The notes under the pieces: model-generated
Told to the model about the DNA's origin: nothing
Database searches by the model: none
The model's input: the letters and a program-made list of their open reading frames with translations, nothing else
Source: Rhodosorus marinus CCMP1338
Lineage: Eukaryota; Plantae; Rhodophyta
Reading direction: 5' to 3'
DNA length: 64,000 nt
NCBI GenBank assembly: GCA_029953675.1
Contig: JAMWBK010000006.1
Coordinates: forward strand, 1,054,001 to 1,118,000
Shown here: positions 1 to 24,522 of the stretch, one piece after another
How the letters are laid out: every line of letters begins with the position of its first letter
Numbering within the stretch: the stretch's first letter is position 1
Program-made: the position numbers and the translations under genes

Positions 1-81
1 TACTGTGGATACAGGTGCGATGAGGACATTGTCGTTTTGGATGACTTCTTGTACGCGGAGCCACAGAGCATCTTCGGTTAA
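1..81 (+). CDS. Secreted 266-aa tandem-array protein, copy 1 (3' end only, truncated by window edge)
   Basis: Frame 1 reads YCGYRCDEDIVVLDDFLYAEPQSIFG*, identical to the C-terminus of copy 2, followed by the same 3' flank with AATAAA at 157-162. Confidence 0.93.
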   Translation, partial: YCGYRCDEDIVVLDDFLYAEPQSIFG

Positions 82-2450
82 GAAGGATTTTTGATAGAGA
101 ACATCCGATATCCTACAAGTATCTAGTAGGGACCCTTTCAGTGGGTTGTACATATCAATAAATCGGAAACATCCTACTTGCTACAGAAACTTAAGACTCG
201 GAAATTCAGAGCAGAATGAAACAAGAGCTCGGTTTCTCGTCCTTTGGTCATACACTTAACCCAATCGTAGCGCTGTGTTCAATAGGAGTCAGTAGAGTCC
301 TACACTACTGTAGAGCTCTCCACAGTATCGAGTAAATACCAGAAACTAGGAACTAGCATTTGTGGCAAGGCCTGTGCACTTGCACTTGAACTCATTGGAA
401 CGAGAATAATACTGCGCTGCAGAGTAGAACGAAGAGTAAACGATGCCTTTGGCGTCGTTTTCTATTTCGACAGGCAGGCTCGAGAATAATACTGCGCTTG
501 CAGAGATAAACGAAGTGAAGCCGACGGCGTTGATGAAGTTTTCTACCTCGATAACGAGGCTCTAGACACGTATTTTCTTCTCCTATTGATCTTACTTCCT
601 GTTTTGGGTGGCGGTGGATCGGGTCTGTCGGTGGAGAAACGAAGTTGAGATTTCGTCGGCCGTTTGGAAATGGAAAGGGGAGAAGAGGGGCAGGGGCGTT
701 CCGGTAGATAGACGAGTATGGGATTGAATTTCGCCCAACGGAGTGTTGAGATAATTTGCTGCGCGTTCAAGCGGATCACCTCACCTGTCATGCTAAACGG
801 GGGATTTCCTTACATGCAAAAATTTCGCGAATCTACGGACTGTGTTCTTGGGGACGAGCTCCTTCGACCGAGAAACGTCGAAAACCTGCCAAGGGCCAAC
901 GCTAATTCGAATAATGTTGACTCGAGCTAAACGAAGCTTTCAGTAAGATTTGCGCAGCATGAGCCCCATAAATTCTGATTCCCATATGCAACCTAAAACA
1001 TGAGCAGATCCGCTGAACAGGTTGGGGAATTGGCGAGGGCTAAAAGGAGTCGGAATCCATATGTGACGGATTCCCGTCGGATGCATTTCGCGAATACGAA
1101 CGGTTCCAATTTAATAATCGGCTTGTTCACATGCACACCTCGCTTATGGAAAGGGTAAATACTATTTCAGAACTACTCTCCAATTAATATTTTAAACAAT
1201 TCAAGACAAGGTTGACGAAAGGAGCTTTAGTTTTTGAGCCAATACACTGATTTTTCCGTTTGTATTTTATTCGCAACTGGATTGGCTAGCAGTTTTTTTG
1301 TTTTTCTTAAAACGTAGTCGGAATTCGCTCTTTTCGAAGCTAAATTTTTTCTTGTCGACCAATTGTTATACCGAGAAAGAGTAGGCCCCTTTCAAAACCA
1401 ATCCAAATTTTAGCCCCAATATTTTTATTAAACAAATTCATTCAATATATATTGCGCGCTTATGTACTGCTGTCGATGTTGGAGCGCGCGATCTTCACTC
1501 GCGTGGTCTTTTTTTCGCTTCGGGGGTTTTTTCTTCAGTTTCCGATTAAACAGATTCATTCAATATTTTTGCGATCAACTATTAAACACACACAAGGCTT
1601 GCGTAATTATTCCCTCTAACCTGTGTTTCAATGTTTTTTGAAGAATTACGAGCCCGGCTAAGCGTCAGGATCAGCGGGGGGATCTGTCTTTGATTACAGA
1701 TTACATATGCTGATTAGCAAAGGTGACACGGAAAGGTTGAATGCATCATTTTTTTTTGTTAGCGTATTTTATTTTCTATTTACGTGCGGGAGGTTAGGAT
1801 TTCACCCCTTTTGCTACGCGTTTTTTTCATTGAGGATTGGATTTTTTTTGTAGTCCGTTCTAACACAGAGGCGAGGGGATAAAACGGGTAAAGGCCGGGA
1901 AACACAGTGTAATTCTGTCCTGGGATGACACCTCGCCCACGAAGTATGCATTGATGTCCGCTGACAAGGCGAATGTTGCCCCTGGTAAACGGTCAATCAG
2001 GTTTACACGGGAAAAAAATCGGATAAATGAAATGTCACAGATGTTGGGCTGTCCTGCTCAGGCCCGGTTTTCGGGGCTAGCTAACTTTTGAACATTTTCC
2101 AAGGGCCAATGATGGTTTCAAAAATTTTTACTGGGCACGAGTCCCTGGATTCCGGTGCTTGTAGGCAACCAGAACTTTCGACAGATCTGAAAAAGTTCAA
2201 GAAATCCGGCGAGGGCTAAGCCGTGGGAACCTGTATGGGACAGACGTCTGCCGTTTAGTAACGGAAGTCTTTGGGTCCCCTCCTCGCAGGGAAAGGGGAC
2301 GAAAATCAGTACATTCTGTGCTCCTTGTGGATGCAACAAATGGGGCGAACTATCGCAGAGTGCGACGGTGGAAACCTCGATTCCGTTTACCTTGCGGATG
2401 CCTTACTTGGCCCACCACTTTGTCATCCCTATTGTCATCCCTATACAGAC

Positions 2451-2459
2451 TATATATAG
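2451..2459 (+). promoter_or_regulatory. TATA box of array gene (same position in all six complete copies)
   Basis: TATATATAG starts exactly 137 nt before the ATG at 2451, 7606, 12495, 16845, 20175 and 23585. Confidence 0.8.
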
Positions 2460-2587
2460 CTGATCCTCCTGCTCCTTCTACATTCGGGTACTCGAAACTC
2501 ATCAAGCACCAGAGACAGTAGCATTGACGGAGACCCAGAGAAGATCAGCAAAGAGACTGTTAGAGAAGACTACATTCAAGGAAGACC

Positions 2588-3388
2588 ATGAAGACTGCTG
2601 TGTATATCGCACTTGTGGCGGCATTGGTTGCCGTTCTCGGTGTAGCAGAGGCGGCGCCGTTCGTCTGCAAGGACCCACACTTCCAGAAGCCCAACTTCAG
2701 GACCATCACTCACGGCCAGAGCCACAACGCACACGGTTTGAAAACCGCCTTCGACTACTTCAAGGATATTCTTGGAGGCAAAGACAACGGAAGCAACCCG
2801 GGACCACTCAGGAAAGGACACCGATCTATCAACTGGGATGCTCCAGTTGTTCCCTTTGAGTTCCCGAGGAAGTTCTTCGAAGAGACCGTCACTCGTGGAC
2901 TCGCTGTCGCAAGCAAGAACAACAAGTTCCGTGTGAGCAACCCGGAACCCAACCACATCGGTGACGACAAGTTCTCCACCATCAACCACCGTGAGTCCAA
3001 GAAGTTCCAGACCTTCAGCCCCAAGAGACTCTTCACACCGATCAAGGACAACGAGTTCTGGATCCGATTCACGGTCCCTGGAAAGAAGACCAAGGCTGTG
3101 GTGAGAGGATTCGGAGCGGTGTTCGTGGGCGTTGACTTGGAGAGAGTGACCAAGATGACTGCCTACGACATCAACGACTGTGTGATCGCGACCGAGTACG
3201 TTGAGGCGAAGAGGAACGGACTGTCGTTCCTTGGATTCTACTTCGAGAAGCCGATCATTGCCCGTGTTGCGATTGAGCTTGGCAACTTCGAGATCGATGC
3301 GAGGAACTACTGTGGATACAGGTGCGATGAGGACATTGTCGTTTTGGATGACTTCTTGTACGCGGAGCCACAGAGCATCTTCGGTTAA
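2588..3388 (+). CDS. Secreted 266-aa tandem-array protein, copy 2 (bacterial PEP-CTERM-associated-like domain, no sorting tail)
   Basis: Intronless ORF with signal peptide MKTAVYIALVAALVAVLGVAEA. Strongly C/G-ending codons, TATATATAG 137 nt upstream, AATAAA 76 nt after the stop. Motifs GGKDNG..PGP..G.RSINWD, FQTFSPKRLFTP, GFGAVF.GVDL, LSFLG, DIVVLDDFLYAEPQ. Confidence 0.95.
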   Translation: MKTAVYIALVAALVAVLGVAEAAPFVCKDPHFQKPNFRTITHGQSHNAHGLKTAFDYFKDILGGKDNGSNPGPLRKGHRSINWDAPVVPFEFPRKFFEETVTRGLAVASKNNKFRVSNPEPNHIGDDKFSTINHRESKKFQTFSPKRLFTPIKDNEFWIRFTVPGKKTKAVVRGFGAVFVGVDLERVTKMTAYDINDCVIATEYVEAKRNGLSFLGFYFEKPIIARVAIELGNFEIDARNYCGYRCDEDIVVLDDFLYAEPQSIFG

Positions 3389-3463
3389 GAAGGATTTTTG
3401 ATAGAGAACATCCGATATCCTACAAGTATCTAGTAGGGACCCTTTCAGTGGGTTGTACATATC

Positions 3464-3469
3464 AATAAA
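3464..3469 (+). terminator. Putative polyadenylation signal of array gene
   Basis: AATAAA in the conserved context catatcAATAAA, ~75-95 nt after the stop in every copy. Confidence 0.65.
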
Positions 3470-6400
3470 TCGGAAACATCCTACTTGCTACAGAAACTTA
3501 AGACTCGGCAATCCACAGTAGAAAAAAACAAGAGCTCGGTTTCTCGTCCTTTGGTCATGCACTTAACCCAATCGTAGCGCTGTGTTCAAGAAGAATCAGT
3601 AGATTCGTACACTACTATAGAGCTCTCCACAGTATCTTGTGAATACCAGAAAGTAGAAAAAACTACCCATCTCAGCAACGCTTGCGCACTTACAGTTCAA
3701 CTCACTGGACGAGCGTACTACTGCGCTGAAGAGTAGAACGAAGAGTATTCGATGTCCTTGGTGAGGTTTTCTATTTCGACAGCAAGGCTCAAGACGCTGT
3801 TTAAAACGCTTGCTGAACTGACTAGAAGCAAACTGCACTTCGCAAACTATCTGGCGGTCCCTAAACCATAGGCTGGAATATCCCAGGAACCATCGGCGTC
3901 CGGGTAGCCTATGGTCGGTCCCTGACTGCAAATGAACGTGTTCATTCGGAGACTGGAAAAGCAAGCCGAGGGGAAAAACAAGACTACTACTGAAGGCGAA
4001 GACCATGGCCTCCAACAACCAAGCAGCGTATATAGGAAGAAACTTGAAGTCGATGAACGTATAAAGTTTGTTGGGAGGCTGAGAAGAAAAACCGAGGGCG
4101 AAAAAGGACTAGTGAAGGCGAAGGTCACGCGCCTCCAACGTCAAAGTAGCGTTCATACGCCTGGACAGGAAACTCAAACGGGCAAATAAGGTGGAGAGCC
4201 GGTCGGAGCGGTCGCGGAACCTTTCAGACAAGGTGAACGGGAACCAACGGAATCCCTTAAGCCAATGCTAGAAGTACCGAGTGGAATACCCAAGGATTCC
4301 GGTACCCGAAAATCAAGTATTCGATTGTGATGCCCGGGTAACCCAGAATACTCCTGCACAGTGTAACTCTTGTTGAGAGTGTACATACGTAGAGCGTGGG
4401 ATATGTCTTAATATGTATGGCTATGAGTTCAAGATGCTCCTATGATTTAGTACTCAGGAAATTTTGTGAGGCTTGGCGCTGTTGGTGGTTTTGAGTTCTC
4501 GTCTACAGTAGTAGAAATGCTTTTGGGTCCTGGGGTCACGTAGTTTAGCCACCCGGCGAGTTTGACTTGTTGTTTGGCGAGGGATCAAAGGGGCTTTTGC
4601 AGTGAGCGAGAAATCGTCGACCCGGAAGACCCATCAGCTGTCCCAAGTTCACTTGCATAGCTGATCTGTAGTATTTTTGAGGTCCGATCGGGAAGACACA
4701 GGCTCCAGGTGCAGAATGGATTCGCGCCCGATGTTTTCCGTGGATCTTACAATCCGCGAGGAGACGATTTGGAAAGTTTGACGCGTGAATCTCTCGAGAG
4801 AGGATTTGGTGTAGAGGACCATCTTGCCAACGACGCTGGTTGGTAGTCCGGTTGTTGTCGGGGGGTTCCGTTAGCTAAAAAAGTGTAATTTGTGGTAAGT
4901 TGCGAGGATGGGTCAGGGGGCACATGTATTTTCTTGATAGCCGCACGAACTGAGAGATTTTGGGTAGGGGAGGTTGTGCTGAGTGGGAAATACCTCGTTG
5001 ACCTGGGGTTGTAAGGCCTCCTGACGTGATGGAATGTGCGTTGTTGCCCTTCCACAAGCCCTGCAATATGCCCGGTCTTGGCTTTTGGCACCCCTCCCCT
5101 CCTGATCTAAAGTGATCCAAAAAGAAGGGTGAGGTATCACGAGCCCAGTACGCCACGGAAAACGGAAAAGTGTTGAATCCAATCGCAGTCATCAGTTTTT
5201 CCCTAGAATCTTGGAACCACCGTAAGCTAGGTTTGCACTTGCATATAAAATTAGACGATCTTACGCTGTTCGACACTGTTCGATAGTGGATTGGCCAAAA
5301 CAGTTTGAGTTTGTCATGAGAACCGAAAGTTGCAATATATTCAAGAATATCTTCACCAAATTATTGCACCTGTTGAATTGGACCTCTCAATCCTGCCTCG
5401 AATTGTTTTCGCCCCCTTTTTTGAAAAATGAAATGGTTTATAGGTTGTGCAAAGCGCCGTCCACGCAGCCGTCAGCAGCCGAGACGAGCTCGGGTTCGGT
5501 GCAACCCGCGCCATAAAGGTCTTCAAGTCTGTTTTGATTCAGTCGGGAATTTACTGGTCTCCATATGCAGCAGATGAAAATTTGTAGTTACTATTATTTG
5601 TTTTTTAGGTTTACATATGCAGACTCCCAGGCTTTTCGTATTGAGCTGACTTCCTTTTTTGTTGAGGGGTGGATCGCGTATGTCGGTGGCGAAACTAAGT
5701 TCAGATTTGGCGGGCGTTTGAAAGGGGAGGGGGAAAAGAGGGGAAGGGGGGTTCCGGTAGATCGATGAGGATGGGATTCTACTCGGTAAACGACGCGTTG
5801 AGAAAATTTGCGTCACGCTAAATGGGGATTTCCTGACACACGAAAATGTCGCGAATCTACGGACTGTATTCTTGGACGGTTCCTTCGACCGCGAAACGTC
5901 GAATATAATGTTGACTCGAGCCAAATGCAGTTTTCAGTAATATTCGCGAAACATGAGCCCGTGAATTCTGGCTCACATATGCAACCTGAAACTTGGACAG
6001 ATCTGCAGAACATTGGGGAATTAGTACAGCTTGAAAGGTATAGGAATCCACACGGCACAGCCGTCTGCCGGGTCGTTTCATAGCCCAAGTTTTTAGGGCT
6101 CTCATCACGGATAACGGAAGAAATTCGGCAGGGTCTGTGCTTATGAAAGATGTAACAAATATGATATACCTTTACAGCGTGCAATAATCGGAATCACGTC
6201 CCAACGACTTCGACACTAACCCATTTCCCTCCCGACTGCCCTCCCCGTTAAACTTGCCTAGCCCAGAACGTCTTGACTCTGCTAAAGTGGTGGTTTGAAA
6301 TACTTGCGTTCCAGGTAGGCCTCAACTAGGTCACGCAGAGGAAGCGTTTAGAGCTAGCCGCTCCACCCGGCGAATCCAAACTCTTAAAAAGCACCTAATT

Positions 6401-6715
6401 CGCCAACTTCTACACCTTCCGCAAGGGGCCCGCGAAAACGGTTAATTCGATTGAACCAAGCATGCTCTGACCAACATATTTAAGTAATTCAAACAACGAT
6501 TCTCACAAGCCCTTATATTTATATAAAAACACACACCTTTTTGTATGCTTCTTATTTATGCTTAATTGGCAGACGGGGTCTGTTTTTCTTAAGAAGCAGT
6601 CTAAATCTGATCCTTTTTAACCTTTTTGGTCTTCTTTTGGCCACGACTATACCTAGAATAGTGGGTCCTCCCAAGTCCCATATGAATTTTAGCCCCATTA
6701 TCTACTCAGAGGTCT

Positions 6716-6763
6716 GAGGGTATTGATTAAGCCTCAGATCCCTGAGGCTTAATCAATACTCTC
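6716..6763. repeat. Perfect 18-bp inverted repeat with 4-nt loop
   Basis: gtattgattaagcctcag (6720-6737) - atcc - ctgaggcttaatcaatac (6742-6759); extends 3 more pairs past one mismatch. Confidence 0.9.
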
Positions 6764-7742
6764 CTGATGGATGCCGTCCGATGCGACGTGGAGGACCTAC
6801 TAGGCTCGGTGTAACCTCAGGAGCGGCGTGCTGATCTGCTTTGATTGTTGCTTACACCCCTTGTTTAGCGAAGGTGACAATGAAAGATTCAATGGATCGT
6901 ATTTTTCGGTGAGTTTATTTTTCCTTAATAAAGAGACGGGGGAAAGGGGGGTTAGATTTAGATTCTATCACTCTTGTCAAGCGTGGAGCGTTTTCATGGA
7001 TTGGGCTTTGTGTCGGGTCCATATACAATAAGACCGCGGCGAGGGGCGAAAACGGGTTTGGGGAGGTGGAGAGTGAGAATCTGCCTCGTGCATGGGCACC
7101 TCGCCCAACGCAGTGTGTGGGTAGGTTTGATGTCCGCCGCAAGGTGACTGATGTCCCTATAACAATCAATCAGTTTTGTTCTGAAACAAAAATCGGATAA
7201 ATCAAAGGTCACGGAAGTCGGGCTGTGCTCCTCAGCTCGGTTCTAGTCTAGCGAACTTTTGAACATTTTCCAAGGGCCTACAATGGTTTCGAAAATGTTT
7301 ACTGGGCACGAGCCCCTGAGTTTCGGTGCTCGTAGGCAACCTGAACTTTGGGCTCTGCGGAACTTCAGGAGATCCGGCGAGGGCTAAAAGGTGTGGGAAC
7401 CTATGTTGGACAGCGGTTTATCTTTTAATAGAGGAAGTTTTTCGGTCCCTCGTCCCAAGGACTAAACGAAAATCCGTAGATTCCGTGCTCCTTGCGGGTG
7501 CAACAAATGGGGCGAACTATACCAGAGTGAGATGATGGCAATCTCGATTCCGTTTACCTTGCGGATGCCATGCTTGCCCACCACTTTGTCACCCCTCTTG
7601 CAGACTATATATAGCTGATCCTCCAGTTCCTTCTACATCCTGGTACTCGAAGCTCATCAAACACCAGAGACAGTAGCATTGACGGAGACCCAGAGAAGAT
7701 CAGCAAAGAGACTGTTAGAGAAGACTACATTCAAGGAGGATC

Positions 7743-13432: not shown

Positions 13433-13607
13433 GAAGGATTTTTGATAGAGAACATCCGATATCCTACAAGTATCTAGTAGGGACCCTTTCAGTGGGTTGT
13501 GCATATCAATAAATCGAAAATATCCTACTTGCTACAGAAACTAAAGACTCGGAAATTCAGAGCAGAATGAAACAAGAGCTCGGTTTCCCGTCCTTTGGTC
13601 ATACGCT

Positions 13608-13697
13608 TAACCCATTGTAGCGCTGTGTTCAATAGTTGTAACCCATTGTAGCGCTGTGTTCAATAGTTGTAACCCATTGTAGCGCTGTGTTCAATAG
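13608..13697 (+). repeat. 31-bp tandem repeat, ~3 copies
   Basis: taacccattgtagcgctgtgttcaatagttg repeated without spacers; single copy in the other units. Confidence 0.92.
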
Positions 13698-13972
13698 GAG
13701 TCAGTAGAGTCCTACACTACTATAGAGCTCTCCACAGTAACATGTGAATACCAGAAACTAGAACGAACTAGCGTTTGTGTGGCAACGCTTGTACCTTGTA
13801 CTTCAACTCATTGGAACAAGTTTAATAACCCTGCTTCCGAGAGAACGAAGAGTATCGATGTCCTTGGTGAGATTTTCTATTTCGACGGCGAGGCTCAAGA
13901 CGCCTCCTTGAAACACTTGCTAAACTGACTCGTGGCAAACTGCTCTTCGCAAACAATCCACAGTCCCTAAAC

Positions 13973-16010: not shown

Positions 16011-16226
16011 CCGAAAGGTTGAACGAATCAATTTTTTTTAGGTGGTGTATTTTATCTTTTATTTACGGGTGGAGGTTCGGAATTTTTATCCCCATTGGTT
16101 AGCGTTTTGAGGATTCGACCCCGAAAGGTTGAACGAATCAATTTGTTTAGGTGGTGTATTTTATCTTTTTATTTACGGGTGGAGGTTCGGAATTTATCCC
16201 TTTTGGTTAGCGGTTTGAGGATTCGA
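16011..16226 (+). repeat. ~110-bp tandem duplication in spacer 4
   Basis: ccgaaaggttgaacgaatcaattt...gaggattcga at 16011 and again at 16121. Confidence 0.9.
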
Positions 16227-16981
16227 TTTTTTTGTAGTCCGTACGATACACAGAGGCTGAGGGGCTAAAACAGGTAAAGGCGGGGAAATAGAGTGCAAAT
16301 CTGTCCCAGCATGACACCTCCACCAACGAAGTGTGCAGGTAGCTGGATGTCCGTCGCAAGGCGAATGTCGTCGCTGATAACTAGAACAGTCAATCACCTT
16401 TTTTCGGAAACAAAAAGAACAAAAAATTGGACAAATGAAAAGTCACAAACGATGTCGGCCGGTGCTCCACAGCTCGGTTCCGGTCCAGCTAACTGTTGAA
16501 CACTTACCAAGTCCAATGACGGTTTCAAAAATGGTTGCTGGGCATGAGCCCCTGAATTCCGGTGCTCGTGGGAAACCTGAACTTTGGGTAGATCTGCAGA
16601 ACTTCAGGAGATCCGCCGAGGGCTAAAAGGTGTGGGAACCAATGTTGGACAGCCGTCTATCTTTTAATAGAAGAAGTTTTTCGGTCCCTCGTCCCAAGGA
16701 GTAAACGAAAATCCTTAGATTCCGCGCTCCTTGCGGGTGCAACAAATGGGGCGAACTATCGCAGGGTGCCATGATGGCAATCTCGATTCCGGTTACCTTG
16801 CGGACGCCTTACTTGGCCCACCACTTTGTCGCCCCTCTACACACTATATATAGCTGATAATCCTGCTCCTTCTACATTCTGGTACTCGAAGCTCATCAAG
16901 CACCAGAGACAGTAGCATTGGCGGAGACCCAGAGAAGATCAGCAAAGAGACTGTTAGAGAAGACTACATTCAAGGAAGACC

Positions 16982-17782
16982 ATGAAGACTGCTGTGTATA
17001 TCGCACTTGTTGCGGCATTGGTTGCCGTTCTCGGTGTTTCGGAAGCGGCGCCGTTCGTCTGCAAGGACCCCCACTTCCAGAAGCCCAACTTCAGGACCAT
17101 CACTCACGGCCAGAGCCACAACGCACACGGTTTGACAACCGCCTTCGAGTACTTCAAGGATATTCTTGGAGGCAAAGACAACGGAAGCAACCCGGGACCA
17201 CTCAGGAAAGGACACCGATCTATTAACTGGGATGCCCCAGTCGTTCCCTTTGAGTTCCCGAGGAAGTTCTTCGAAGAGACTGTCACCCGTGGACTCGCTG
17301 TCGCAAGCAAGAACAACAAGTTCCGTGTGAGCAACCCTAAACCCAACCACATCGGTGATGACAAGTTCTCCACCATCAACCGCCGGGAGTCCAAGAAGTT
17401 CCAGACCTTCAGCCCTAAGAGACTGTTCACACCGATCAAGGACAACGAGTTCTGGATCCGATTCACGGTCCCCGCAAAGAAGACCAAGGCTGTGGTGAGA
17501 GGATTCGGAGCGGTGTTCGTCGGCGTTGACTTGGAGAGAGTGACCAAGATGACTGCCTACGACATCAACGACTGTGTGATCGCGTCCGAGTACGTTGAGG
17601 CGAAGAGGAACGGACTATCATTCCTTGGATTCTACTTCGAGAAGCCGATCATTGCCCGTGTTGCGATTGAGCTTGGCAACTTCGAGATCGATGCCAAGAA
17701 CTACTGTGGATACAGGTGCGACGAGGACATTGTCGTTTTGGATGACTTCTTGTACGCGGAGCCACAGAGCATCTTCGGTTAA
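16982..17782 (+). CDS. Secreted 266-aa tandem-array protein, copy 5
   Basis: Intact ORF with variants SNPKPN, VPAKK, DAKNY. TATA at 16845. Confidence 0.95.
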   Translation: MKTAVYIALVAALVAVLGVSEAAPFVCKDPHFQKPNFRTITHGQSHNAHGLTTAFEYFKDILGGKDNGSNPGPLRKGHRSINWDAPVVPFEFPRKFFEETVTRGLAVASKNNKFRVSNPKPNHIGDDKFSTINRRESKKFQTFSPKRLFTPIKDNEFWIRFTVPAKKTKAVVRGFGAVFVGVDLERVTKMTAYDINDCVIASEYVEAKRNGLSFLGFYFEKPIIARVAIELGNFEIDAKNYCGYRCDEDIVVLDDFLYAEPQSIFG

Positions 17783-18229
17783 GGAGGATTTTGCTACAAA
17801 GCATCCGATATCCTGTAGTAATCCATCGCCAGCGCACTACAGTAGGCGCCTTTTCATTGGGTTGTCCATATCAATAAATCGGAAACATCCTACATGCTAC
17901 TGAAATTTAAGATTACCACATTCACAGTACAAAAGACCGATACGTTTCGTGATTTGATCAACCCTTACCCCATCGTGGCGCTGTGTTCAATAGCGGCCTG
18001 TAGAGTCCCAAACTACTATAGAGTTAATTCTCGAAAGTGGGGTCTTCAGAACAGGAAGTAGAAAGAACAACAGCAGTTGTGGCAACGCTTGTGCACTTAC
18101 AGTTCAATTCATTGAGGCTTCCTATCTTGACAACAAGGCTCGAGAGGCGTATTTTCTTCTTCTTCTATTGATCTTACTAATTGTTTTTGGTGGTGGATCG
18201 CGTGAGAAAACTCGCTGCCAATTGTAAGC

Positions 18230-18777
18230 GGATTACCTCGCCTGGCACGCTAAAGGAGGAATCCGGACACATCAAATGTGGCGAAAACAGCGGGTTTTGT
18301 TTTGAGGATGAGCTTCCCAGGGGAAAGATACGCTGAAAACTTTCCTAGGGTCAATATAATTTCAATAATGTTGCTGGAGCAAAATGAAGAAATCAATAAT
18401 ATTGAAAAATGAATGAATTTGTTTAATCCGAAACTCAGAGAAAAAAAAGCGATGGGAAAAAAAAGAGTATTTGTGCAGTATGAGCCAGTGAATTCTGGTT
18501 CCCGCATCCAACCTAAGATTTGGACGTATGTACAGAACCTGTTGGAGAATTTTAGGGAACTAAAGGGTCGGAATCTATACGTCACGCAGCGACCGGCGGA
18601 TGTACTCCGCCATTTTGCAACAGGCTTTTTTGGGGTCCGTCGTCACGAGGAACGCACGGAAATCGGTAGAACCTGTGCTCTCCGGAGATGCAACGGATGG
18701 GGAGTCATCCTCAGCGTGCGATGACAGGAATCTGGAACCAACGATTTCACCGCCAATCCGTTTACCTTCTGGATGCC
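18230..18777 (+). repeat. TATA-less paralog ('shadow copy') of the array gene's upstream region; others at ~730-1085, ~5760-6240, ~10815-11340, ~15105-15470
   Basis: 18661-18777 (aatcggtagaacctgtgctc..gatgcaacggatgggg..ccgtttaccttctggatgcc) aligns by eye to true upstream 12359-12458 (aatccgtagattccgtgctc..gtgcaacaaatgggg..ccgtttaccttgcggatgcc). Other copies share cctcgcccaacg, ccaagggccaa, gcatgagccc and ggcgagggctaaaa blocks in the same order. Confidence 0.8.
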
Positions 18778-20311
18778 GCACCCGTTAACCCGGCTTGGCC
18801 CGGAATGTGTTGAGCTACATTACGCAGTAGTCCACTGAATGGCAGTTTTGAAGTACTTCCGTTAGGGCCCGGTGCGGAAACGTTCTTGGAGGCCTCCACT
18901 GCATTCTTGCGAATAGAAAACGATAAAAAGGACCAATTTCAACCCTTTTCACTAAATGCAAGTTCCCTATGAAAACAGTAAAATTTATACGACTAGTATA
19001 TTATATTGAATATTGTTAAAACAATTCAAGCAAAGATCTATATTAGCATCTGGATTTATCATTGTAAATACATCATCGTCTTGGCTTGCACCTTAATTCA
19101 CTACTGTATTGGCCAAGAGTTTCTGGTTTTTATTGAGGAATATTGAACACTTTGCGGTTTTAAAGCAATTAGGTTCATTTTTGACCAATCATCATATATC
19201 GAAGACTGGGTAGTTCTCGCTCAGGTCCGAATTTTAGCCCCAATAGTTCTGACTCTTAATCAATACGTTCCGCTCAGTTGCGGGCTGATGCAACGTGGTT
19301 GATTGCCGACGCCAGCGCGAAAGCCAGAAGCGGCGTGTGGATCTGTTTTGACCTAGCTTACATACGCTGTTCCGAATAAAAACATTATTTCGATTAGCGA
19401 ACATCGCTTAAAGCTTTCAAGATGACGCCGAAAGCTCCAACGGATCATGTTTTTTTTGGCTGAGTGAACTTTCCTTTATTGAAGGGCTGAGAAGCTTAGG
19501 CTGCCCGGGTTTGGATCGATTTCCTGCCTCTCTATTAAAGCGTTTCCGTTGGGGATTAGCTTTTTTTTGTAGGCCGTTAGGACCTCGGCGCGGGGCTAAA
19601 ACTGGTAGCATTAGACGGAGAGTGTAAATCCAGCGTGAAACCTCGCCCAACGAGGTGTGAAAGGTAGCTTGATGTCCGTCGCAAGGGGATTATTGCCCCT
19701 GATTAAACAGTCCATCAGTATTATTATTCGGAAACACACAACAAAAAAGGATAAATCAAAAGCCATAAAAGCTGTCCTTTTCAGGTTCGGTTCCGGTCCA
19801 GTTACTGTTGAAGACTTTCAAAGGGCCAAGGATGGCTTTAAAAATGTTTACGCGGAACGAGCCCCTGAATTAAGGGGCTTGTAGGCAACCTCAACTTTGG
19901 AAAGATCTACAAAACTGTTGCAGGAAAAGGGACGAGGGCTAAAAGCCGTCGGACGTTATTTGGGACAGCCGGCTGTTGTATAATAACGGAAGTTTTTGGG
20001 TCCCCTCCTCACAGGGAATGGACGAAAATTCGTAGATTCTGTCCTACTTGTAGATGCAACAAATGGGGCGCACTATCGCAGAGTGCGACGATGGCAATCT
20101 CGATTCCATTTACGCCGCGCTTACTCCGTGGATACCATACTTGGCCCACCACTTTCTCACCTTTCTAAACACTATATATATAGCTCATCCTCCAGCTCCT
20201 TCTACATTTGGGTACTCGAAACTCATCAAGCACCAGAGAGAGTAGCATTGACGGAGACCCAGAGAAGATCAGCAAAGAGACTGTTAGAGAAGACTACATT
20301 CAAGGAAGACC

Positions 20312-21112
20312 ATGAAGACTACTGTGTATATCGCACTTGTGGCGGCATTGGTTGCCGTTCTCGGTGTTTCGGAAGCGGCGCCGTTCGTCTGCAAGGACCC
20401 CCACTTCCAGAAGCCCAACTTTAGGACCATCACTCACGGCCAGAGCCACAACGCACACGGTTTGAAAACCGCCTTCGAGTACTTCAAGGATATTCTTGGA
20501 GGCAAAGACAACGGAAGCAAGCTGGGACCACTCAGGAAAGGACACCGATCTATCAACTGGGATGCCCCAGTCGTTCCCTTTGAGTTCCCGAGGAAGTTCT
20601 TCGAAGAGACTGTCACCCGTGGACTCGCTGTCGCAAGCAAGAACAACAAGTTCCGTGTGAGCAACCCGGAACCCAACCACATCGGTGATGACAAGTTCTC
20701 CACCATCAACCGCCGGGAGTCCAAGAAGTTCCAGACCTTCAGCCCCAAGAGACTCTTCACACCGATCAAGGACAACGAGTTCTGGATCCGATTCACGGTC
20801 CCTGGAAAGAAGACCAAGGCTGTGGTGAGAGGATTCGGAGCGGTGTTCGTGGGCGTTGACTTGGAGAGAGTGACCAAGATGACTGCCTACGACATCAACG
20901 ACTGTGTGATCGCGTCCGAGTACGTTGAGGCCAAGAGGGACGGACTGTCGTTCCTTGGATTCTACTTCGAGAAGCCGATCATTGCTCGTGTTGCGATTAA
21001 GCTTGGCAACTTCGAGATCGATGCCAAGAACTACTGTGGATACAGGTGCGATGAGGACATCGTCGTTTTGGATGACTTCTTGTACGCCGAGCCACAGAGC
21101 ATCTTCGCTTAA
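20312..21112 (+). CDS. Secreted 266-aa tandem-array protein, copy 6
   Basis: Intact ORF with variants MKTTVY, SKLGP, KRDG, IKLG, SIFA. TATA at 20173-20183. Confidence 0.95.
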   Translation: MKTTVYIALVAALVAVLGVSEAAPFVCKDPHFQKPNFRTITHGQSHNAHGLKTAFEYFKDILGGKDNGSKLGPLRKGHRSINWDAPVVPFEFPRKFFEETVTRGLAVASKNNKFRVSNPEPNHIGDDKFSTINRRESKKFQTFSPKRLFTPIKDNEFWIRFTVPGKKTKAVVRGFGAVFVGVDLERVTKMTAYDINDCVIASEYVEAKRDGLSFLGFYFEKPIIARVAIKLGNFEIDAKNYCGYRCDEDIVVLDDFLYAEPQSIFA

Positions 21113-23030
21113 GAAGGATTTTTCTACAGAACATCTGATATCCTATGAAGATCCATAGCCAGAGTGCTACCTTAGGCACCCTTTCGCTGGGATGTACATA
21201 TCAATAAAAAGGAACCATCCTGTATTGGTATTGAAACCATAAATTTCTCGCTCTCAGCTCGACACTTTTGTCCACATGCCCGAAAAAAGCTCCATACACG
21301 CGTTTCAGGAAGCACGCAGCTCGATCTTACTCTCGTTTCTCACGTGAAAAGCGATAAATGTTGTTTCTTGAGAAGGACATGTTCCTGTTTACCTTTCATA
21401 TAGAAGAATTATCTTCCTCTTTAGGTGCCGTAATTCAGTGTTCGTCGTTTCCCTGCTCAGGCATCGAACCTCGTCTCAGCCCTGCGGATGCGACGATGGA
21501 TAGGGCAGACTGTCTTTTCAAAGAGTACGCAAGATTCGACTGAAAAGCGGGACGACGGTTTCTTGTTCTCAACACGAAGGACGGTCGGGAAACAGAAAAG
21601 TTTCTGGATCCCAATTTTTTTTCTTGAATACTGTTTTTCTCTTTATCGTATTTTCTATTCAAGCGCGCTTGAACAACCACTTTCGCCTTCCGTCCAGTGT
21701 ACCATGTAGTACTTTAAACAGATCTGCCCTTTGAATAATCGTACCGTGTGCTCATACTCTAAATATCTGCTGGAAACTGCTTGGATGGGAGACTGTGCCT
21801 GTCCCCACACAGCTCGAGGTTCTGTGGATTCCGAAAACCCAAGAGAAATCAAGAACTATGACCTCCGAATGTTCCACAAAATCGCAGAATTATGCGGATG
21901 GAAACAAAGCTTCACAGATCTGCACTCAAAACAAAACGTCAGATTGCGAGGTAGCGAAGTTGGTCCCGGATGGATAACGTTTCCGTCGACTCCAAGGGCC
22001 TCCAGTTATCGTTTTCTTGCTTCCCCAACTCGCGCAACTCCGGGAATATGAAAACGATCGAAAAGGGGCCAAACTCACCAACTGTCACGAAGCGCTAGCT
22101 AGCCATGAAAACGGTTAAACATATGCAACAAATACTCGCCTCGAGTTTTTTTAACTGATTCAACAACAGGCTGCAAGCGTTTGCTTGCACAAACATCTAC
22201 GTCATCATCAAAAATACACAAAAACCTCTAAGGAGACTGAGAATACACAAAAAACTATCGGAACCGTCCAAATTTACCAATTCTTCACCAAACGCTTACC
22301 GCCGAATCGAAAACGGTATTATTGATACAAAGGACCACTAGTTTCTCATTCCTAGTTTTACCCAATATGCAAAAATCTTTGGGTCAAAACTCTGCATTTA
22401 TCATTGAAAATACATCTACACGTTCAAGAGCACCTCACTCCTTACTGGATTGGCCAATACGTTTTTGCTTTTTGAAGACTAATACATATTTTTGTGTTTT
22501 TAAAACTATTAAGATATACTTTGACCAATCATTGTACCCGTACGTGGGTCCTCCCAATTCGCAATTTTAGCCCCATTAATTCAGGAACTTAATCAATATT
22601 CTCCCGTGAGATATTGTGCCATGCAACGTGGAGGATTTACTAGGCCCGGAGCAACGGCAGGAGCAGGGAGCGGATCTGTTTTGATTGTTTGCTTACATCC
22701 GGGGCTTTAGACGACTGTGGTCCAATCTTCCTTTTACATCGAAAGGTTCAACGGATCCTAGTTTTTTGTGAGTTTTTCTTCTAAGGAGAGCGGGGGTTGG
22801 GATTCGAGACTCGGACTTGTGACTCTTGCGACGCGTTTTGATGGGGTATTGGATTTGTTGCGGGAACCCTGCGATGAATGATAAGACACCGGCGAGGGGC
22901 AAAAGCTGTGAGAATCTATCCGGGGATGGCGGAGTGTGCGAGGTCGATTGATGTCCGTTGCAAGGGAACAAGTGTCCCTCATACAGTCAATGGATTATTC
23001 TGTGACAAAAAAAATGTACAAATCAACTAT

Positions 23031-23300
23031 CGCAGAAGATGTCGGGCCGTGCTCGTCAGGCTCAATTCCGGTCCAGCTACTAGTTGCACGCATTCCGCGG
23101 GCCATCGAGAATTTCAAAAATGTCTACTGAGCGCAAGTCACTGAGTCCCGGCTCTCTGAAACGTCACAGAAGATGTCGGGCTGTGCTTCTCAGGTTCGGT
23201 TCCGGTCCAGTTAACTGTTGAAGACTTTCACAGGGCCAATGAAGGCTTTGAAAATGTTTACGCGGAACGAGCCCCTGAATTAAGGGGCTTGTAGGCAACC
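23031..23300 (+). repeat. ~134-bp imperfect tandem duplication upstream of copy 7 (likely out-of-register crossover junction)
   Basis: cagaagatgtcggg..gtgct..cagg..c.gttccggtccag....gttg..cgggcca..ga...ttt.aaaaatgt at 23031 and 23165; the second copy continues into sequence nearly identical to copy 6's upstream region. Confidence 0.75.
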
Positions 23301-23721
23301 TCAACTTTGGAAAGATCTACAAAACTGTTGCAGGAAAAGGGACGAGGGCTAAAAGCCGTCGGACGTTATTTGGGACAGCCGGCTGTTGTATAATAACGGA
23401 AGTTTTTGGGTCCCCTCCTCACAGGGAATGGACGAAAATTCGTAGATTCTGTCCTACTTGTAGATGCAACAAATGGGGCGCACTATCGCAGAGTGCGACG
23501 ATGGCAATCTCGATTCCATTTACGCCGCGCTTACTCCGTGGATACCATACTTGGCCCACCACTTTCTCACCTTTCTAAACACTATATATATAGCTCATCC
23601 TCCAGCTCCTTCTACATTTGGGTACTCGAAACTCATCAAGCACCAGAGAGAGTAGCATTGACGGAGACCCAGAGAAGATCAGCAAAGAGACTGTTAGAGA
23701 AGACTACATTCAAGGAAGACC

Positions 23722-24522
23722 ATGAAGACTACTGTGTATATCGCACTTGTGGCGGCATTGGTTGCCGTTCTCGGTGTTTCGGAAGCGGCGCCGTTCGTCT
23801 GCAAGGACCCCCACTTCCAGAAGCCCAACTTTAGGACCATCACTCACGGCCAGAGCCACAACGCACACGGTTTGAAAACCGCCTTCGAGTACTTCAAGGA
23901 TATTCTTGGAGGCAAAGACAACGGAAGCAAGCTGGGACCACTCAGGAAAGGACACCGATCTATCAACTGGGATGCCCCAGTCGTTCCCTTTGAGTTCCCG
24001 AGGAAGTTCTTCGAAGAGACTGTCACCCGTGGACTCGCTGTCGCAAGCAAGAACAACAAGTTCCGTGTGAGCAACCCGGACCCCAACCACATTGGTGATG
24101 ACAAGTTCTCCACCATCAACCGCCGGGAGTCCAAGAAGTTCCAGACCTTCAGCCCCAAGAGACTCTTCACACCGATCAAGGACAACGAGTTCTGGATCCG
24201 ATTCACGGTCCCTGGAAAGAAGACCAAGGCTGTGGTGAGAGGATTCGGAGCGGTGTTCGTGGGCGTTGACTTGGAGAGAGTGACCAAGATGACTGCCTAC
24301 GACATCAACGACTGTGTGATCGCGTCCGAGTACGTTGAGGCCAAGAGGGACGGACTGTCGTTCCTTGGATTCTACTTCGAGAAGCCGATCATTGCTCGTG
24401 TTGCGATTGAGCTTGGCAACTTCGAGATCGATGCCAAGAACTACTGTGGATACAGGTGCGATGAGGACATCGTCGTTTTGGATGACTTCTTGTACGCCGA
24501 GCCACAGAGCATCTTCGCTTAA
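23722..24522 (+). CDS. Secreted 266-aa tandem-array protein, copy 7 (last in array)
   Basis: Intact ORF nearly identical to copy 6 (NPDPN, IELG); shares ~500 nt upstream and ~370 nt downstream flank with copy 6. Confidence 0.95.
   Translation: MKTTVYIALVAALVAVLGVSEAAPFVCKDPHFQKPNFRTITHGQSHNAHGLKTAFEYFKDILGGKDNGSKLGPLRKGHRSINWDAPVVPFEFPRKFFEETVTRGLAVASKNNKFRVSNPDPNHIGDDKFSTINRRESKKFQTFSPKRLFTPIKDNEFWIRFTVPGKKTKAVVRGFGAVFVGVDLERVTKMTAYDINDCVIASEYVEAKRDGLSFLGFYFEKPIIARVAIELGNFEIDAKNYCGYRCDEDIVVLDDFLYAEPQSIFA

What the first reader, a model, noticed from the sequence alone, without database searches (positions are those of the whole stretch)
1..24522. Amplified array of a bacterial-type exported protein that stops where the PEP-CTERM tail would begin
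Seen: at least 7 intact, intronless, signal-peptide-bearing copies with strongly biased codons and a fixed TATA position, suggesting a very abundant secreted product. Recalled knowledge: motifs GG..NG..PGP..G.R.INWD, F.TFSP.RLFT, VPG....A.V.GFGAVF.DVD, LSFLG..F and D.V..DDF.Y.EPQ characterise an uncharacterised bacterial family that often ends in a PEP-CTERM signal directly after EPQ; here EPQ is followed only by SIFG*. Inference: a horizontally acquired bacterial surface/EPS-associated protein, re-fitted with a eukaryotic signal peptide, given 4 Cys (possible disulfides) and an NGS sequon, and amplified for dosage as a cell-wall or mucilage component of unknown biochemistry.
Basis: partly seen in the sequence, partly recalled or inferred. 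Interest (0 to 1): 0.8.

Follow-up and report, generated by a model that had tools for sequence, protein, structure and literature searches.

The report
Amplified secreted bacterial-type protein genes
A unicellular red alga (Rhodosorus marinus) carries a head-to-tail array of at least seven nearly identical genes, missing from the gene calls I could retrieve for the public assembly, that encode a small secreted protein; its only domain belongs to a large uncharacterised family otherwise found mostly on bacterial cell surfaces, and red algae appear to have acquired it once, long ago.

Summary
The observation largely holds. The window has six complete, intronless 266-aa ORFs on the + strand and the last 26 codons of a seventh, cut by the window edge. 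All have a signal peptide, strong codon bias, TATATATAG at exactly -137, and AATAAA 76-91 nt after the stop. dN/dS is 0.08-0.18.

The ~220-aa domain matches no Pfam, NCBIfam or PDB sequence, yet the family is large: 1220 clusters at 50% identity, and relatives in at least 562 stretches of bacterial species genomes. In bacteria it is an extracellular module, often followed directly after EP(Q) by a PEP-CTERM tail.

All named eukaryotic members form one clade (100/95). They are Stylonematophyceae, Bangiophyceae, Florideophyceae, plus Ostreobium and a diatom. The nearest bacterial group is PEP-CTERM-tailed. This fits one ancient bacterial acquisition, not a recent one.

Changes specific to the eukaryotic clade or to red algae are no tail, a conserved Cys27/Cys198 pair, and a shift from acidic to basic pI.

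Function is unknown. My best inference is a soluble beta-sandwich protein that binds the polyanionic wall or mucilage, kept at high dosage by tandem amplification and gene conversion. High expression is not shown: the two Rhodosorus marinus transcriptomes held in the database contain no orthologous transcript.

The parts
1..81 (+). Copy 0: last 26 codons and the TAA stop of a further array member, cut by the window edge. AATAAA at 157-162.
   Evidence: tblastn gives 100% identity to residues 241-266. Its 3' flank aligns with those of copies 1-3. AATAAA offset.
2451..3469 (+). Copy 1 gene unit. TATATATAG at 2451-2459, inferred 5' UTR, CDS 2588-3388 (266 aa, ends SIFG*), AATAAA at 3464-3469.
7606..8624 (+). 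Copy 2 gene unit. TATA at 7606-7614, CDS 7743-8543, AATAAA at 8619-8624.
   Evidence: Three nucleotide differences from copy 3.
12495..13513 (+). Copy 3 gene unit. TATA at 12495-12503, CDS 12632-13432, AATAAA at 13508-13513. A perfect 31-bp tandem repeat follows at 13608-13697.
16845..17878 (+). Copy 4 gene unit. TATA at 16845-16853, CDS 16982-17782, AATAAA at 17873-17878.
20175..21208 (+). Copy 5 gene unit. TATA at 20175-20183, CDS 20312-21112 (ends SIFA*), AATAAA at 21203-21208.
   Evidence: A 98.8%-identical 1.7-kb tract is shared with copy 6.
23585..24618 (+). Copy 6 gene unit, the last of the array. TATA at 23585-23593, CDS 23722-24522 (ends SIFA*), AATAAA at 24613-24618.
   Evidence: No further copy up to position 64000.
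1..24904 (+). The whole array. Unit spacings are 5155, 4889, 4350, 3330 and 3410 bp. Each unit has a homogenised block (about 550 bp upstream, the CDS, and 50-400 bp downstream) set in a spacer that is 75-80% identical or unalignable and has no recognisable coding content.
   Evidence: Self-BLAST, identity by region, spacer ORFs without Pfam hits.

Best explanation
[quoted passage not shown] It has at least seven co-oriented, independently promoted, intronless genes.

**What each gene encodes.** A 266-aa pre-protein. After inferred signal-peptide cleavage (AEA|AP) it becomes a roughly 27.8-kDa, basic (pI about 9), single-domain protein with no membrane anchor, predicted to be a beta-sandwich. 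The domain belongs to a large uncurated family of bacterial extracellular modules, in which it is often anchored through a PEP-CTERM/exosortase tail.

**Origin (inferred).** A tail-bearing bacterial relative, in a group that includes cyanobacteria and marine proteobacteria, donated the gene once. This happened before the Stylonematophyceae, Bangiophyceae and Florideophyceae diverged. The eukaryotic lineage lacks the sorting tail and gained a Cys27-Cys198 pair, probably a disulfide formed in the ER. In red algae the domain also switched from acidic to basic.

**Function (inferred, not shown).** The protein is released into the wall or mucilage. There it binds the polyanionic (sulfated or uronic) polysaccharide matrix, through its conserved polar surface and its positive charge. 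It would act as a lectin-like matrix component, not as an anchored surface protein.

**Why an array (inferred).** The copies supply dosage. They are kept alike by purifying selection, codon-usage selection and short-tract gene conversion centred on the promoter and CDS.
For: **Array and gene anatomy**
- Copies, promoters and 3' signals.
- Purifying selection: dN/dS 0.08-0.18 in 14 of 15 pairs.
- The CDS and its third codon positions (97.6% and 94.7% identity) are more alike than the flanking non-coding DNA (80%, 82% and 65%).
- Tracts of 1.6-1.7 kb are bounded by diverged spacer. Copies 5 and 6 are 98.8% identical over 1725 bp, and copies 2 and 3 are 94.4% identical against 79% in the spacer.
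- Adjacent copies are the most similar.

**Eukaryotic nuclear setting**
- The window lies on a 2.47-Mb contig of GCA_029953675.1, the R. marinus CCMP1338 assembly.
- Its neighbours encode LIM, C2H2 and SpoU proteins.

**The family**
- 338 word-index hits and 1220 hits among representatives.
- At least 562 confirmed stretches in bacterial species genomes, across about 14 phyla.
- No Pfam, NCBIfam or PDB sequence match.
- In long bacterial proteins the domain is fused to Calx-beta, CHRD, LTD, CWB2, RTX, dockerin, FG-GAP, a T9SS tail and others, which marks it as an extracellular module.

**Structure**
- AF2 gives pLDDT 89.9 and pTM 0.86, mostly beta strand.
- The best structural neighbours are CBM and lectin sandwiches and phage tail-fibre or receptor-binding modules, all weak matches.

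**Phylogeny**
- Eukaryotic clade supported at 100/95.
- Eukaryotes plus 15 tailed bacteria against the other bacteria at 100/99.
- 11 of 12 of those nearest bacterial loci carry a sorting tail directly after EP(Q).

**Changes specific to the eukaryotic clade or to red algae**
- The Cys27/Cys198 pair.
- Median pI 9.4 in the eukaryotic clade against 4.3 elsewhere (Mann-Whitney p = 1e-23).
- Named red-algal members have pI 8.6-11.5, with one exception.
Against: - No expression or localisation data were available.
- Two R. marinus transcriptomes (MMETSP/EukProt) have no transcript above 58% identity to the array protein, yet they hold an 87% orthologue of the adjacent FG-GAP gene. The array may therefore be silent, condition-specific, or confined to the CCMP1338 lineage.
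- Fold similarity to carbohydrate-binding modules is weak: TM normalised to the query is 0.25-0.41, and no PDB hit is below E = 1e-3.
- The many invariant polar residues (N67, R79, N82, W83, D84, R103, S144, R147, S213, D254, D255, E260) would suit an enzyme as well as a binder.
- Bacterial gene neighbourhoods gave no functional clue.
- The direction of transfer depends on where the tree is rooted, and that is not determined.
- The pI contrast is not corrected for phylogenetic non-independence. One red alga (Gracilaria domingensis), the green alga and the diatom have acidic members.
Confidence: 0.55

Rival explanations
1. The domain is an extracellular enzyme, for example a lyase, hydrolase, esterase or transferase acting on exopolysaccharide or another polymer outside the cell. 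The alga amplified it for catalytic capacity, not for a structural or binding role.
For: - About 45 invariant or near-invariant positions persist across phyla at only 35-45% overall identity. They include many polar residues clustered in loop motifs: NNGN.PGP, GRR.INWD, TRG, FSP.RLF, DDF.YGEP.
- Several polysaccharide lyases and glycoside hydrolases use beta-jelly-roll folds (general knowledge).
- A phage 'putative pectate lyase' and K2 capsule depolymerase tailspikes are among the weak structural neighbours.
Against: - No match to any enzyme family by sequence.
- No conserved His or Tyr among the invariant residues.
- In bacteria the domain often occurs in 2-6 tandem copies within one protein, or beside adhesin-type repeats. 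That pattern is more typical of binding modules.
- No conserved neighbouring polysaccharide-metabolism genes.
Confidence: 0.15
2. The array encodes a condition-specific secreted defence or stress protein, such as an agglutinin against bacteria or grazers, or a nutrient-stress exoprotein. It would be expressed only on induction, not as a constitutive matrix component.
For: - No orthologous transcript in two R. marinus culture transcriptomes, although the neighbouring gene's orthologue is present.
- Tandem amplification with homogenisation is common for defence and stress genes (general knowledge).
- A basic, secreted, lectin-like fold fits an agglutinin.
- Some bacterial homologues sit next to ECF sigma factors or response regulators, which hints at regulated expression there.
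Against: - Very strong codon bias and a canonical TATA usually go with high, steady expression.
- dN/dS of about 0.1 shows no sign of the diversifying selection typical of arms-race proteins.
- The MMETSP strains differ from CCMP1338 (87% identity in the neighbour), so the array could simply be lineage-specific.
Confidence: 0.2
3. A recent, lineage-specific horizontal transfer from a PEP-CTERM bacterium into Rhodosorus, followed by amplification. This is the literal reading of the first-stage interpretation.
For: - Intronless genes in a genome that averages about three introns per gene (PMC10250338).
- Clear bacterial homologues, up to 45% identical.
Against: - Homologues in three red-algal classes, a green alga and a diatom form one strongly supported clade, separated from all bacteria by a long branch.
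- Within that clade, the Pyropia, Florideophyceae and Rhodosorus groups track taxonomy.
- Codon usage, TATA and poly(A) signals are fully native.
- The window protein is closer to other red-algal proteins (58-46%) than to any bacterium (45% at most).
Confidence: 0.03
4. The array is an assembly artefact, or a set of decaying, non-functional repeats.
For: - The copies are absent from the gene calls retrieved for the public assembly.
- No matching transcript in the databases searched.
Against: - The copies differ from one another (3-29 nucleotide differences), with dS up to 0.13 and dN/dS about 0.1.
- All six ORFs are intact, each with a conserved promoter, 5' UTR and poly(A) signal.
- The spacers differ in length and sequence.
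- The assembly is long-read and chromosome-level (PMC10250338).
Confidence: 0.04

Closest known systems
Bacterial PEP-CTERM / exosortase-sorted surface proteins (Pfam PF07589 motif), e.g. 'PEP-CTERM sorting domain-containing protein' of Lusitaniella coriacea and Nitrosomonas sp.
   Same: - The globular domain is homologous over its full length: 42-45% identity, E 1e-42 to 1e-46.
- Both have an N-terminal signal peptide.
- The motif set is the same and ends in DDF.Y.EP(Q).
   Different: - The algal protein stops 4 residues after EPQ. It has no PEP motif, no transmembrane helix and no basic cluster.
- No exosortase is expected in a eukaryote.
- It carries a Cys27/Cys198 pair that bacteria lack.
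- It is basic (pI about 9), while the bacterial domains are acidic (median pI 4.3).
Red-algal orthologues and paralogues: R. marinus MMETSP transcripts (A0A7S3E8G5, A0A7S3A265), Chondrus crispus XP_005710290/XP_005716070, Pyropia yezoensis I4F81_001882, P. vietnamensis MMPV_006785/90/91, Gracilariopsis chorda BWQ96_03556, Gracilaria domingensis FGB62_193g053.
   Same: - One clade with the window protein.
- Similar size (about 250-265 aa), a signal peptide, a short tail after EP(Q), and the conserved Cys pair.
- Mostly basic.
- Small local clusters also exist: three genes on one P. vietnamensis contig.
   Different: - Only 40-58% identical to the window protein.
- None of the ones examined forms a head-to-tail array of 7 or more near-identical copies.
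- All are annotated only as hypothetical or unnamed proteins. The UniRef 'fibrillin' label for the Chondrus protein has no Pfam support.
Beta-sandwich carbohydrate-binding modules and lectins (CBM61, CBM4, CBM47 fucose-binding module, CBM22, CBM6, CBM29).
   Same: - Predicted mostly-beta sandwich.
- These modules are the commonest type among the top Foldseek hits.
- Extracellular, and modular in bacteria.
   Different: - Similarity is weak: TM normalised to the query 0.25-0.33, sequence identity 6-15%, E above 1e-3.
- The domain is about 70-90 residues larger.
- No sequence relationship, and sugar binding is untested.
Tandemly arrayed genes evolving in concert, such as histone, rDNA or secreted-protein clusters.
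   Same: - Co-oriented units, each with its own promoter.
- Adjacent copies are the most alike.
- High-identity tracts are confined to the gene plus promoter, within diverged spacers.
   Different: Unit length varies from 3.3 to 5.2 kb, and the spacers are old (75-80% identity). This is not a young, uniform amplification.

Membership tests
PEP-CTERM / exosortase substrate (PF07589, TIGR02595-type) | C-terminal PEP (or variant) motif, then a hydrophobic helix and a basic cluster | tested here: not met
   All copies end EPQSIFG* or EPQSIFA*. Pfam finds no PEP-CTERM in the window protein, but does in 24 of 109 homologues.
PEP-CTERM / exosortase substrate (PF07589, TIGR02595-type) | An exosortase (EpsH/XrtA) encoded in the same genome | not testable with these tools
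   Only the 64-kb window of the eukaryotic genome could be read. No exosortase-like ORF was noticed in it.
Unnamed ~220-aa 'INWD...GFGAVF...DDF.Y.EP' extracellular domain family (no Pfam or NCBIfam model) | Significant full-length sequence homology to family members | tested here: met
   phmmer E 4.6e-92 to 1e-30 against 120 or more proteins, with 80-100% query coverage. 1220 representative clusters at E<=1e-3.
Unnamed ~220-aa 'INWD...GFGAVF...DDF.Y.EP' extracellular domain family (no Pfam or NCBIfam model) | The conserved motif set and invariant residues (N67, G77, W83, D84, P89, P93, F97, G104, G174, S213) | tested here: met
   All of them are present in the window protein, which is row 1 of alignment A1. 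One local deviation: VGVD in place of TDVD.
Unnamed ~220-aa 'INWD...GFGAVF...DDF.Y.EP' extracellular domain family (no Pfam or NCBIfam model) | Export signal at the N-terminus | tested here: met
   A hydrophobic N-terminal core is present in the window protein, in 44/53 eukaryotic-clade members and in 51/55 bacterial members. This was a hydropathy test only, with no SignalP.
Carbohydrate-binding module / lectin beta-sandwich | Clear structural match to a CBM or lectin fold (for example TM > 0.5) | tested here: inconclusive
   The model is confident (pLDDT 89.9). Best PDB matches have TM normalised to the query of 0.25-0.33 and E >= 1.6e-3. Best BFVD match has TM 0.41, to a collagen-like protein's C-terminal domain.
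Carbohydrate-binding module / lectin beta-sandwich | Demonstrated glycan binding | not testable with these tools
   Needs recombinant protein with glycan arrays or pull-downs.
Bacterium-derived (HGT/EGT) gene in red algae | The eukaryotic sequences form a clade nested within, or sister to part of, bacterial diversity with strong support | tested here: met
   Careful IQ-TREE run: eukaryotic clade 100/95, and {eukaryotes + 15 bacteria} against 55 bacteria at 100/99. Caveat: the tree is unrooted, so nesting holds only if the root lies within the bacteria.
Bacterium-derived (HGT/EGT) gene in red algae | Not contamination: physically linked to eukaryotic genes and carrying eukaryotic expression signals | tested here: met
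   A 2.47-Mb nuclear contig. LIM, C2H2 and SpoU neighbours. TATA at -137 and AATAAA downstream.
Bacterium-derived (HGT/EGT) gene in red algae | Specifically cyanobacterial (endosymbiotic) ancestry | tested here: inconclusive
   The best bacterial genome hit is Acaryochloris marina at 45%, and cyanobacteria sit in the nearest group. That group also holds proteobacteria, Nitrospirales and a planctomycete, and its internal order is unresolved.
Concertedly evolving tandem gene array | High-identity tracts limited to the gene region within diverged spacers, with neighbouring copies most alike | tested here: met
   No formal gene-conversion test (such as GENECONV) was run.

The most novel reading that the evidence does not exclude
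The domain is a previously undescribed family that recognises or modifies glycans, widespread on bacterial surfaces as cargo for PEP-CTERM, T9SS, RTX and CWB2 anchors. Red algae captured it once, early, and remodelled it into a soluble, basic partner of their sulfated-galactan matrix by losing the tail, adding a disulfide and inverting the charge. On this reading, the Rhodosorus array reveals a major wall or mucilage protein that has so far been missed. It would also offer a first experimental route to the function of a whole class of exosortase substrates.
Probability: 0.3. Interest if true: 0.7.

Novelty: new variant of a known kind. Interest (0 to 1): 0.5.

Why it matters
**For red-algal biology.** Very few protein components of the wall or mucilage are known. 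Here is a conserved, secreted, mostly basic protein family present in unicellular and multicellular red algae. In one species it is amplified to at least seven copies that the gene calls I could retrieve for the assembly lack. That makes it a concrete candidate for a matrix protein.

**For microbiology.** The same domain is common cargo for exosortase/PEP-CTERM and other surface-anchoring systems across about 14 phyla. Yet it has no Pfam or NCBIfam model, no solved structure and no known function. The small, soluble, single-domain algal version would be a convenient form for biochemistry and crystallography.

**For evolution.** It is a clean example of how an ancient bacterial gene was adapted to the eukaryotic secretory pathway. 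The anchor is absent, a Cys pair was gained, the charge was reversed and codon usage became native. The gene was later expanded by tandem duplication with gene conversion.

**For annotation.** None of the six complete copies appears among the gene calls I could retrieve for the public assembly (five checked by look-up, one inferred).

Tried and rejected
- **Pfam and NCBIfam** scans of the window protein at E<=1 gave nothing.
- **Pfam on all 109 aligned members** hit only the C-terminal sorting motifs.
- **A profile search of PDB sequences** gave no hit at E<=10.
- **Foldseek against PDB and BFVD** gave only generic beta-sandwich similarity, too weak to assign a family.
- **Spacer ORFs** of 100 aa or more have no domain hits, so no second gene or transposon was recognised inside the units.
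- **Bacterial genomic context:**
  - two individual loci were inspected;
  - neighbouring ORFs from 80 loci were clustered;
  - no partner recurs in more than about 9% of loci, and those that do are ubiquitous regulators;
  - I therefore dropped the idea of inferring function from an operon.
- **Exact-sequence look-ups** of copies 1, 2 and 3 in public gene calls found nothing on record. This also prevented fetching DNA to the left of the window to see how far the array extends.
- **Literature searches** by homologue accession or locus tag, and for PEP-CTERM together with red-algal names, found no paper on this family.
- **The 294-aa antisense ORFs** over copies 1 and 2 were rejected as genes. 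They are absent from copies 3-6 and are explained by codon bias.
- **The N-glycosylation sequon** was rejected as an adaptation, because it lies on the invariant Asn and is rare in both clades.
- **The 'fibrillin/plastid lipid-associated' label** on a Chondrus homologue was rejected for lack of Pfam support.

Full report
**1. What is in the sequence**

The + strand of window 1-24,904 carries six complete 801-nt ORFs of 266 aa. They start at 2588, 7743, 12632, 16982, 20312 and 23722. The last 26 codons of a further copy occupy 1-81 and are cut by the window edge. No other copy lies between 24.6 and 64 kb. The array may continue to the left.

The copies are 95.9-98.5% identical in protein to copy 1 and differ from one another at 14 residues. 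Unit spacing falls from 5155 to 3330 bp.

Self-comparison shows a homogenised block in each unit: about 550 bp upstream, the CDS, and 50-400 bp downstream. This block is 88-98% identical between units. It sits in spacer DNA that is only 75-80% identical or unalignable. Spacer ORFs of 100 aa or more have no Pfam match.

**2. Gene anatomy**

- TATATATAG lies at exactly -137 from the ATG in all six copies, with no indel in between.
- The last 140 nt before the ATG are 93.8% identical on average.
- AATAAA follows the stop at +76 (copies 0-3) or +91 (copies 4-6).
- The ORFs have no introns, although the host genome averages about three introns per gene (PMC10250338).
- Codon usage is strongly skewed. 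Two-fold codons run C:T 412:58 and G:A 215:31, against roughly 55:45 and 62:38 in five neighbouring ORFs. GC3 is 0.72 against 0.51-0.65.

Pairwise dN/dS is 0.08-0.18, apart from one near-identical pair, so the copies are under purifying selection. Third codon positions (94.7% identical) are more alike than the flanking non-coding DNA (80%, 82% and 65%). The high-identity tracts are short:

- copies 5 and 6 are 98.8% identical over 1725 bp;
- copies 2 and 3 are 94.4% identical over 1606 bp, against about 79% in their spacers;
- adjacent copies are the most similar.

I read this as old duplication followed by short-tract gene conversion and codon-usage selection. No formal conversion test was run.

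**3. The product**

- The N-terminus (MK, a 17-residue hydrophobic core, AEA|AP) looks like a classic signal peptide. This rests on inspection and hydropathy only.
- The mature protein would be 244 aa, about 27.8 kDa, with pI 8.8-9.2.
- It has Cys at 27, 198, 242 and 246 and one NGS sequon at N67.
- There is no transmembrane segment or anchor. Every copy ends EPQSIFG* or EPQSIFA*.
- AlphaFold2 with a 109-sequence alignment gives a confident model (pLDDT 89.9, pTM 0.86). It has about 13 strands and one long helix.

**4. The host**

The adjacent FG-GAP gene identifies the window as NCBI GCA_029953675.1, contig JAMWBK010000006.1 (2.47 Mb). That is the long-read nuclear assembly of Rhodosorus marinus CCMP1338, a member of the Stylonematophyceae (PMC10250338). 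Neighbouring ORFs encode LIM, C2H2 zinc-finger and SpoU-type proteins. The DNA is eukaryotic nuclear DNA, not contamination.

The gene calls held for this record show nothing across copies 5 and 6. The products of copies 1-3 are not on record either. Copy 4 was not looked up. As far as I could check, the array is unannotated.

**5. The family**

- The window protein has no Pfam or NCBIfam match at E<=1.
- A profile of the family finds no PDB sequence at E<=10.
- Across 109 members, Pfam recognises only the C-terminal sorting motifs: PEP-CTERM in 24 and VPDSG-CTERM in 3.

Even so, the family is large. There are 338 hits in the word-indexed search and 1220 clusters at 50% identity in the exhaustive search, 740 of them at E<=1e-10. 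At least 562 confirmed stretches occur in bacterial species genomes. They span Cyanobacteriota, Pseudomonadota, Nitrospirota, Actinomycetota, Planctomycetota, Acidobacteriota, Gemmatimonadota, Bacteroidota, Chloroflexota, Armatimonadota, Ignavibacteriota and others.

The domain covers roughly residues 40-264. It has ten invariant and about 35 near-invariant positions. In long bacterial proteins it occurs in 2-6 tandem copies. It is also fused to Calx-beta, CHRD, LTD, CWB2, DUF4394, RTX repeats, Big_7, dockerin, FG-GAP, cupredoxin, RskA_C and a T9SS sorting tail. It therefore behaves as an extracellular module that different lineages anchor in different ways.

After the terminal DDF.Y.EP(Q) motif, about a quarter of the 120 closest members continue straight into a PEP-CTERM-type tail. 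The rest stop within 2-8 residues. These include actinobacterial members and all eukaryotic ones.

**6. Phylogeny and origin**

Named eukaryotic homologues come from:

- R. marinus MMETSP strains (58, 53 and 50% identical);
- Pyropia yezoensis and P. vietnamensis, the latter with three genes on one contig, two of them divergent and 2.6 kb apart;
- Chondrus crispus, Gracilaria domingensis, G. changii, Gracilariopsis chorda and Agarophyton chilense;
- the green alga Ostreobium quekettii, with two adjacent pairs whose gene spans exceed the CDS and so presumably contain introns;
- a diatom transcriptome, Grammatophora oceanica.

Three trees agree. In the careful IQ-TREE run:

- the window groups with the three Rhodosorus paralogues (100/99);
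- all 17 named eukaryotic rows, with 13 unlabelled metagenomic rows, form one clade (100/95);
- that clade joins 15 bacterial sequences against the other 55 bacteria (100/99).

The 15 bacterial sequences are from cyanobacteria, marine proteobacteria, Nitrospirales and a Phycisphaeraceae member. Of the 12 that are genome loci, 11 carry a sorting tail immediately after EP(Q), and the Acaryochloris one continues into RTX-like repeats.

Provided the root lies within the bacterial diversity, the eukaryotic genes descend from one acquisition from a tail-bearing bacterial lineage. I cannot prove that root position, but the family's breadth in bacteria favours it. Inside the eukaryotic clade, the Pyropia, Florideophyceae and Rhodosorus groups follow taxonomy. 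The acquisition therefore predates the split of those classes. It is not a recent event in Rhodosorus.

An endosymbiotic (cyanobacterial) origin is possible but not demonstrable. Acaryochloris is the best bacterial genome hit, at 45%, but the nearest group mixes several phyla.

**7. What changed on the eukaryotic side**

- **Tail.** No member of the clade has a sorting tail.
- **Cysteines.** Cys27 and Cys198 are present in 48/53 and 49/53 clade members, against 12/55 and 1/55 bacterial members. This suggests a disulfide gained for folding in the ER. Cys242 and Cys246 are confined to the Rhodosorus subgroup.
- **Charge.** Domains in the eukaryotic clade have median pI 9.4 (66% above 7.5). All other domains have median pI 4.3 (10% above 7.5), Mann-Whitney p = 1e-23. 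Named red-algal members run from 8.6 to 11.5, except G. domingensis at 4.5. The Ostreobium and diatom members remain acidic. The test ignores shared ancestry, but the pattern is striking.
- **Sequon.** The NGS sequon lies on the invariant Asn67 and occurs in only 10/53 eukaryotic-clade and 7/55 bacterial members, so I regard it as incidental.

**8. Function**

Nothing tested here identifies a biochemical activity.

- Structural neighbours are weak. In the PDB, TM normalised to the query is 0.25-0.33 and E is at least 1.6e-3. In BFVD the best TM is 0.41.
- They are nevertheless dominated by beta-sandwich carbohydrate-binding modules and lectins (CBM61, CBM4, CBM47, CBM22, CBM6, CBM29), and by phage tail-fibre, tailspike and giant-virus collagen-like C-terminal modules.
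- Bacterial gene neighbourhoods contain no recurrent partner.

My best-supported reading rests on five things: the extracellular modular use in bacteria, the conserved polar surface rich in Arg, Asp, Asn and Trp, the absence of an anchor, the basic charge in algae whose walls are polyanionic, and the codon bias with multi-copy dosage. Together they suggest a soluble, lectin-like protein that binds the wall or mucilage matrix. An enzymatic role, or an inducible defence or stress role, remains open.

One point counts against 'constitutively very abundant'. The two R. marinus transcriptomes in MMETSP/EukProt contain an 87% orthologue of the neighbouring FG-GAP gene, but nothing above 58% for the array protein. 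Either the array is specific to the CCMP1338 lineage, or it is not expressed under those culture conditions.

**9. Verdict**

The acquisition is ancient and shared across red algae, not a recent event. Expression and localisation are untested.

Three things make the finding moderately interesting. The domain family is large and has no curated model or solved structure. The eukaryotic lineage shows a coherent set of adaptations. The array is absent from the retrievable gene calls. None of this overturns current understanding.

Noticed in passing
window 29535-31106 (+): The gene just right of the array encodes a 523-aa secreted FG-GAP_2 repeat protein that also looks bacterial in type. Apart from an 87% Rhodosorus marinus orthologue, the named hits among the rest are all bacterial and none exceeds 34% identity. 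In bacteria, FG-GAP repeats are sometimes fused to the array's domain (P0243, P0249, P0221). It may be a second bacterium-derived secreted gene, perhaps functionally linked.
   Followed up: partly
window 2576-3460 (-) and 7731-8615 (-): Two 294-aa antisense ORFs span copies 1 and 2 completely. They are interrupted in copies 3-6. They look like a by-product of the sense strand's codon bias, not genes, and could mislead ORF-based gene callers.
   Followed up: yes
window 20312-24522 (L009 778-4988); copies 1-3: The gene calls held for the public record (GCA_029953675.1) contain none of the five array genes I checked: copies 5 and 6 by position, copies 1-3 by exact product. Copy 4 was not looked up.
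   Followed up: partly
window 26800-27700: A strongly C-rich, G-poor tract lies just beyond the array (GC skew -0.39 over 26-28 kb). It contains a 102-bp unit repeated 2.1 times at 27287-27502. Its function is unknown.
   Followed up: no
window 13608-13697 and 401-566: A perfect 31-bp tandem repeat (2.9 copies) sits in the 3' flank of copy 3, where the other units have a single copy. An 81-bp repeat (2.1 copies, 75% matches) sits in the spacer after copy 0.
   Followed up: no
P0009 (NCBI MEL7523080.1, 'Cyanobacteria bacterium J06553_1', 1146-bp contig): This 'cyanobacterial' MAG protein falls inside the eukaryotic clade, next to unlabelled short contigs. Its C-terminus looks frameshifted. It is probably mis-binned eukaryotic DNA, not a bacterial member.
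   Followed up: partly
P0302/P0309/P0310 and P0143/P0311 (Ostreobium quekettii); P0031 (Grammatophora oceanica): A green ulvophyte has two adjacent gene pairs whose gene spans are longer than the CDS. A diatom transcriptome also has a member. All fall in the same clade as the Rhodosorus proteins but remain acidic. This could reflect transfer between eukaryotes, or wider ancestry.
   Followed up: partly
L005 1462-4575 (metagenome scaffold, ENA ERZ23491218) and window 43575-45104: On a gene-sparse, eukaryote-like metagenomic contig, a family member lies about 1 kb from a SpoU methylase gene. The window also has a SpoU-type gene, 19 kb downstream of the array. This may be remnant synteny or coincidence.
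   Followed up: no
P0020 (Chondrus crispus XP_005710290, UniRef R7QRA9): UniRef names this homologue 'Plastid lipid-associated protein/fibrillin conserved domain-containing protein'. No Pfam fibrillin match was found for it or for any of the 109 aligned members.
   Followed up: yes
window 43575-45104 (+): The SpoU-type RNA methyltransferase ORF has a long N-terminal extension rich in Gly, Arg and Ser, containing 12-bp and 69-bp tandem repeats (44031-44066 and 44150-44291).
   Followed up: no
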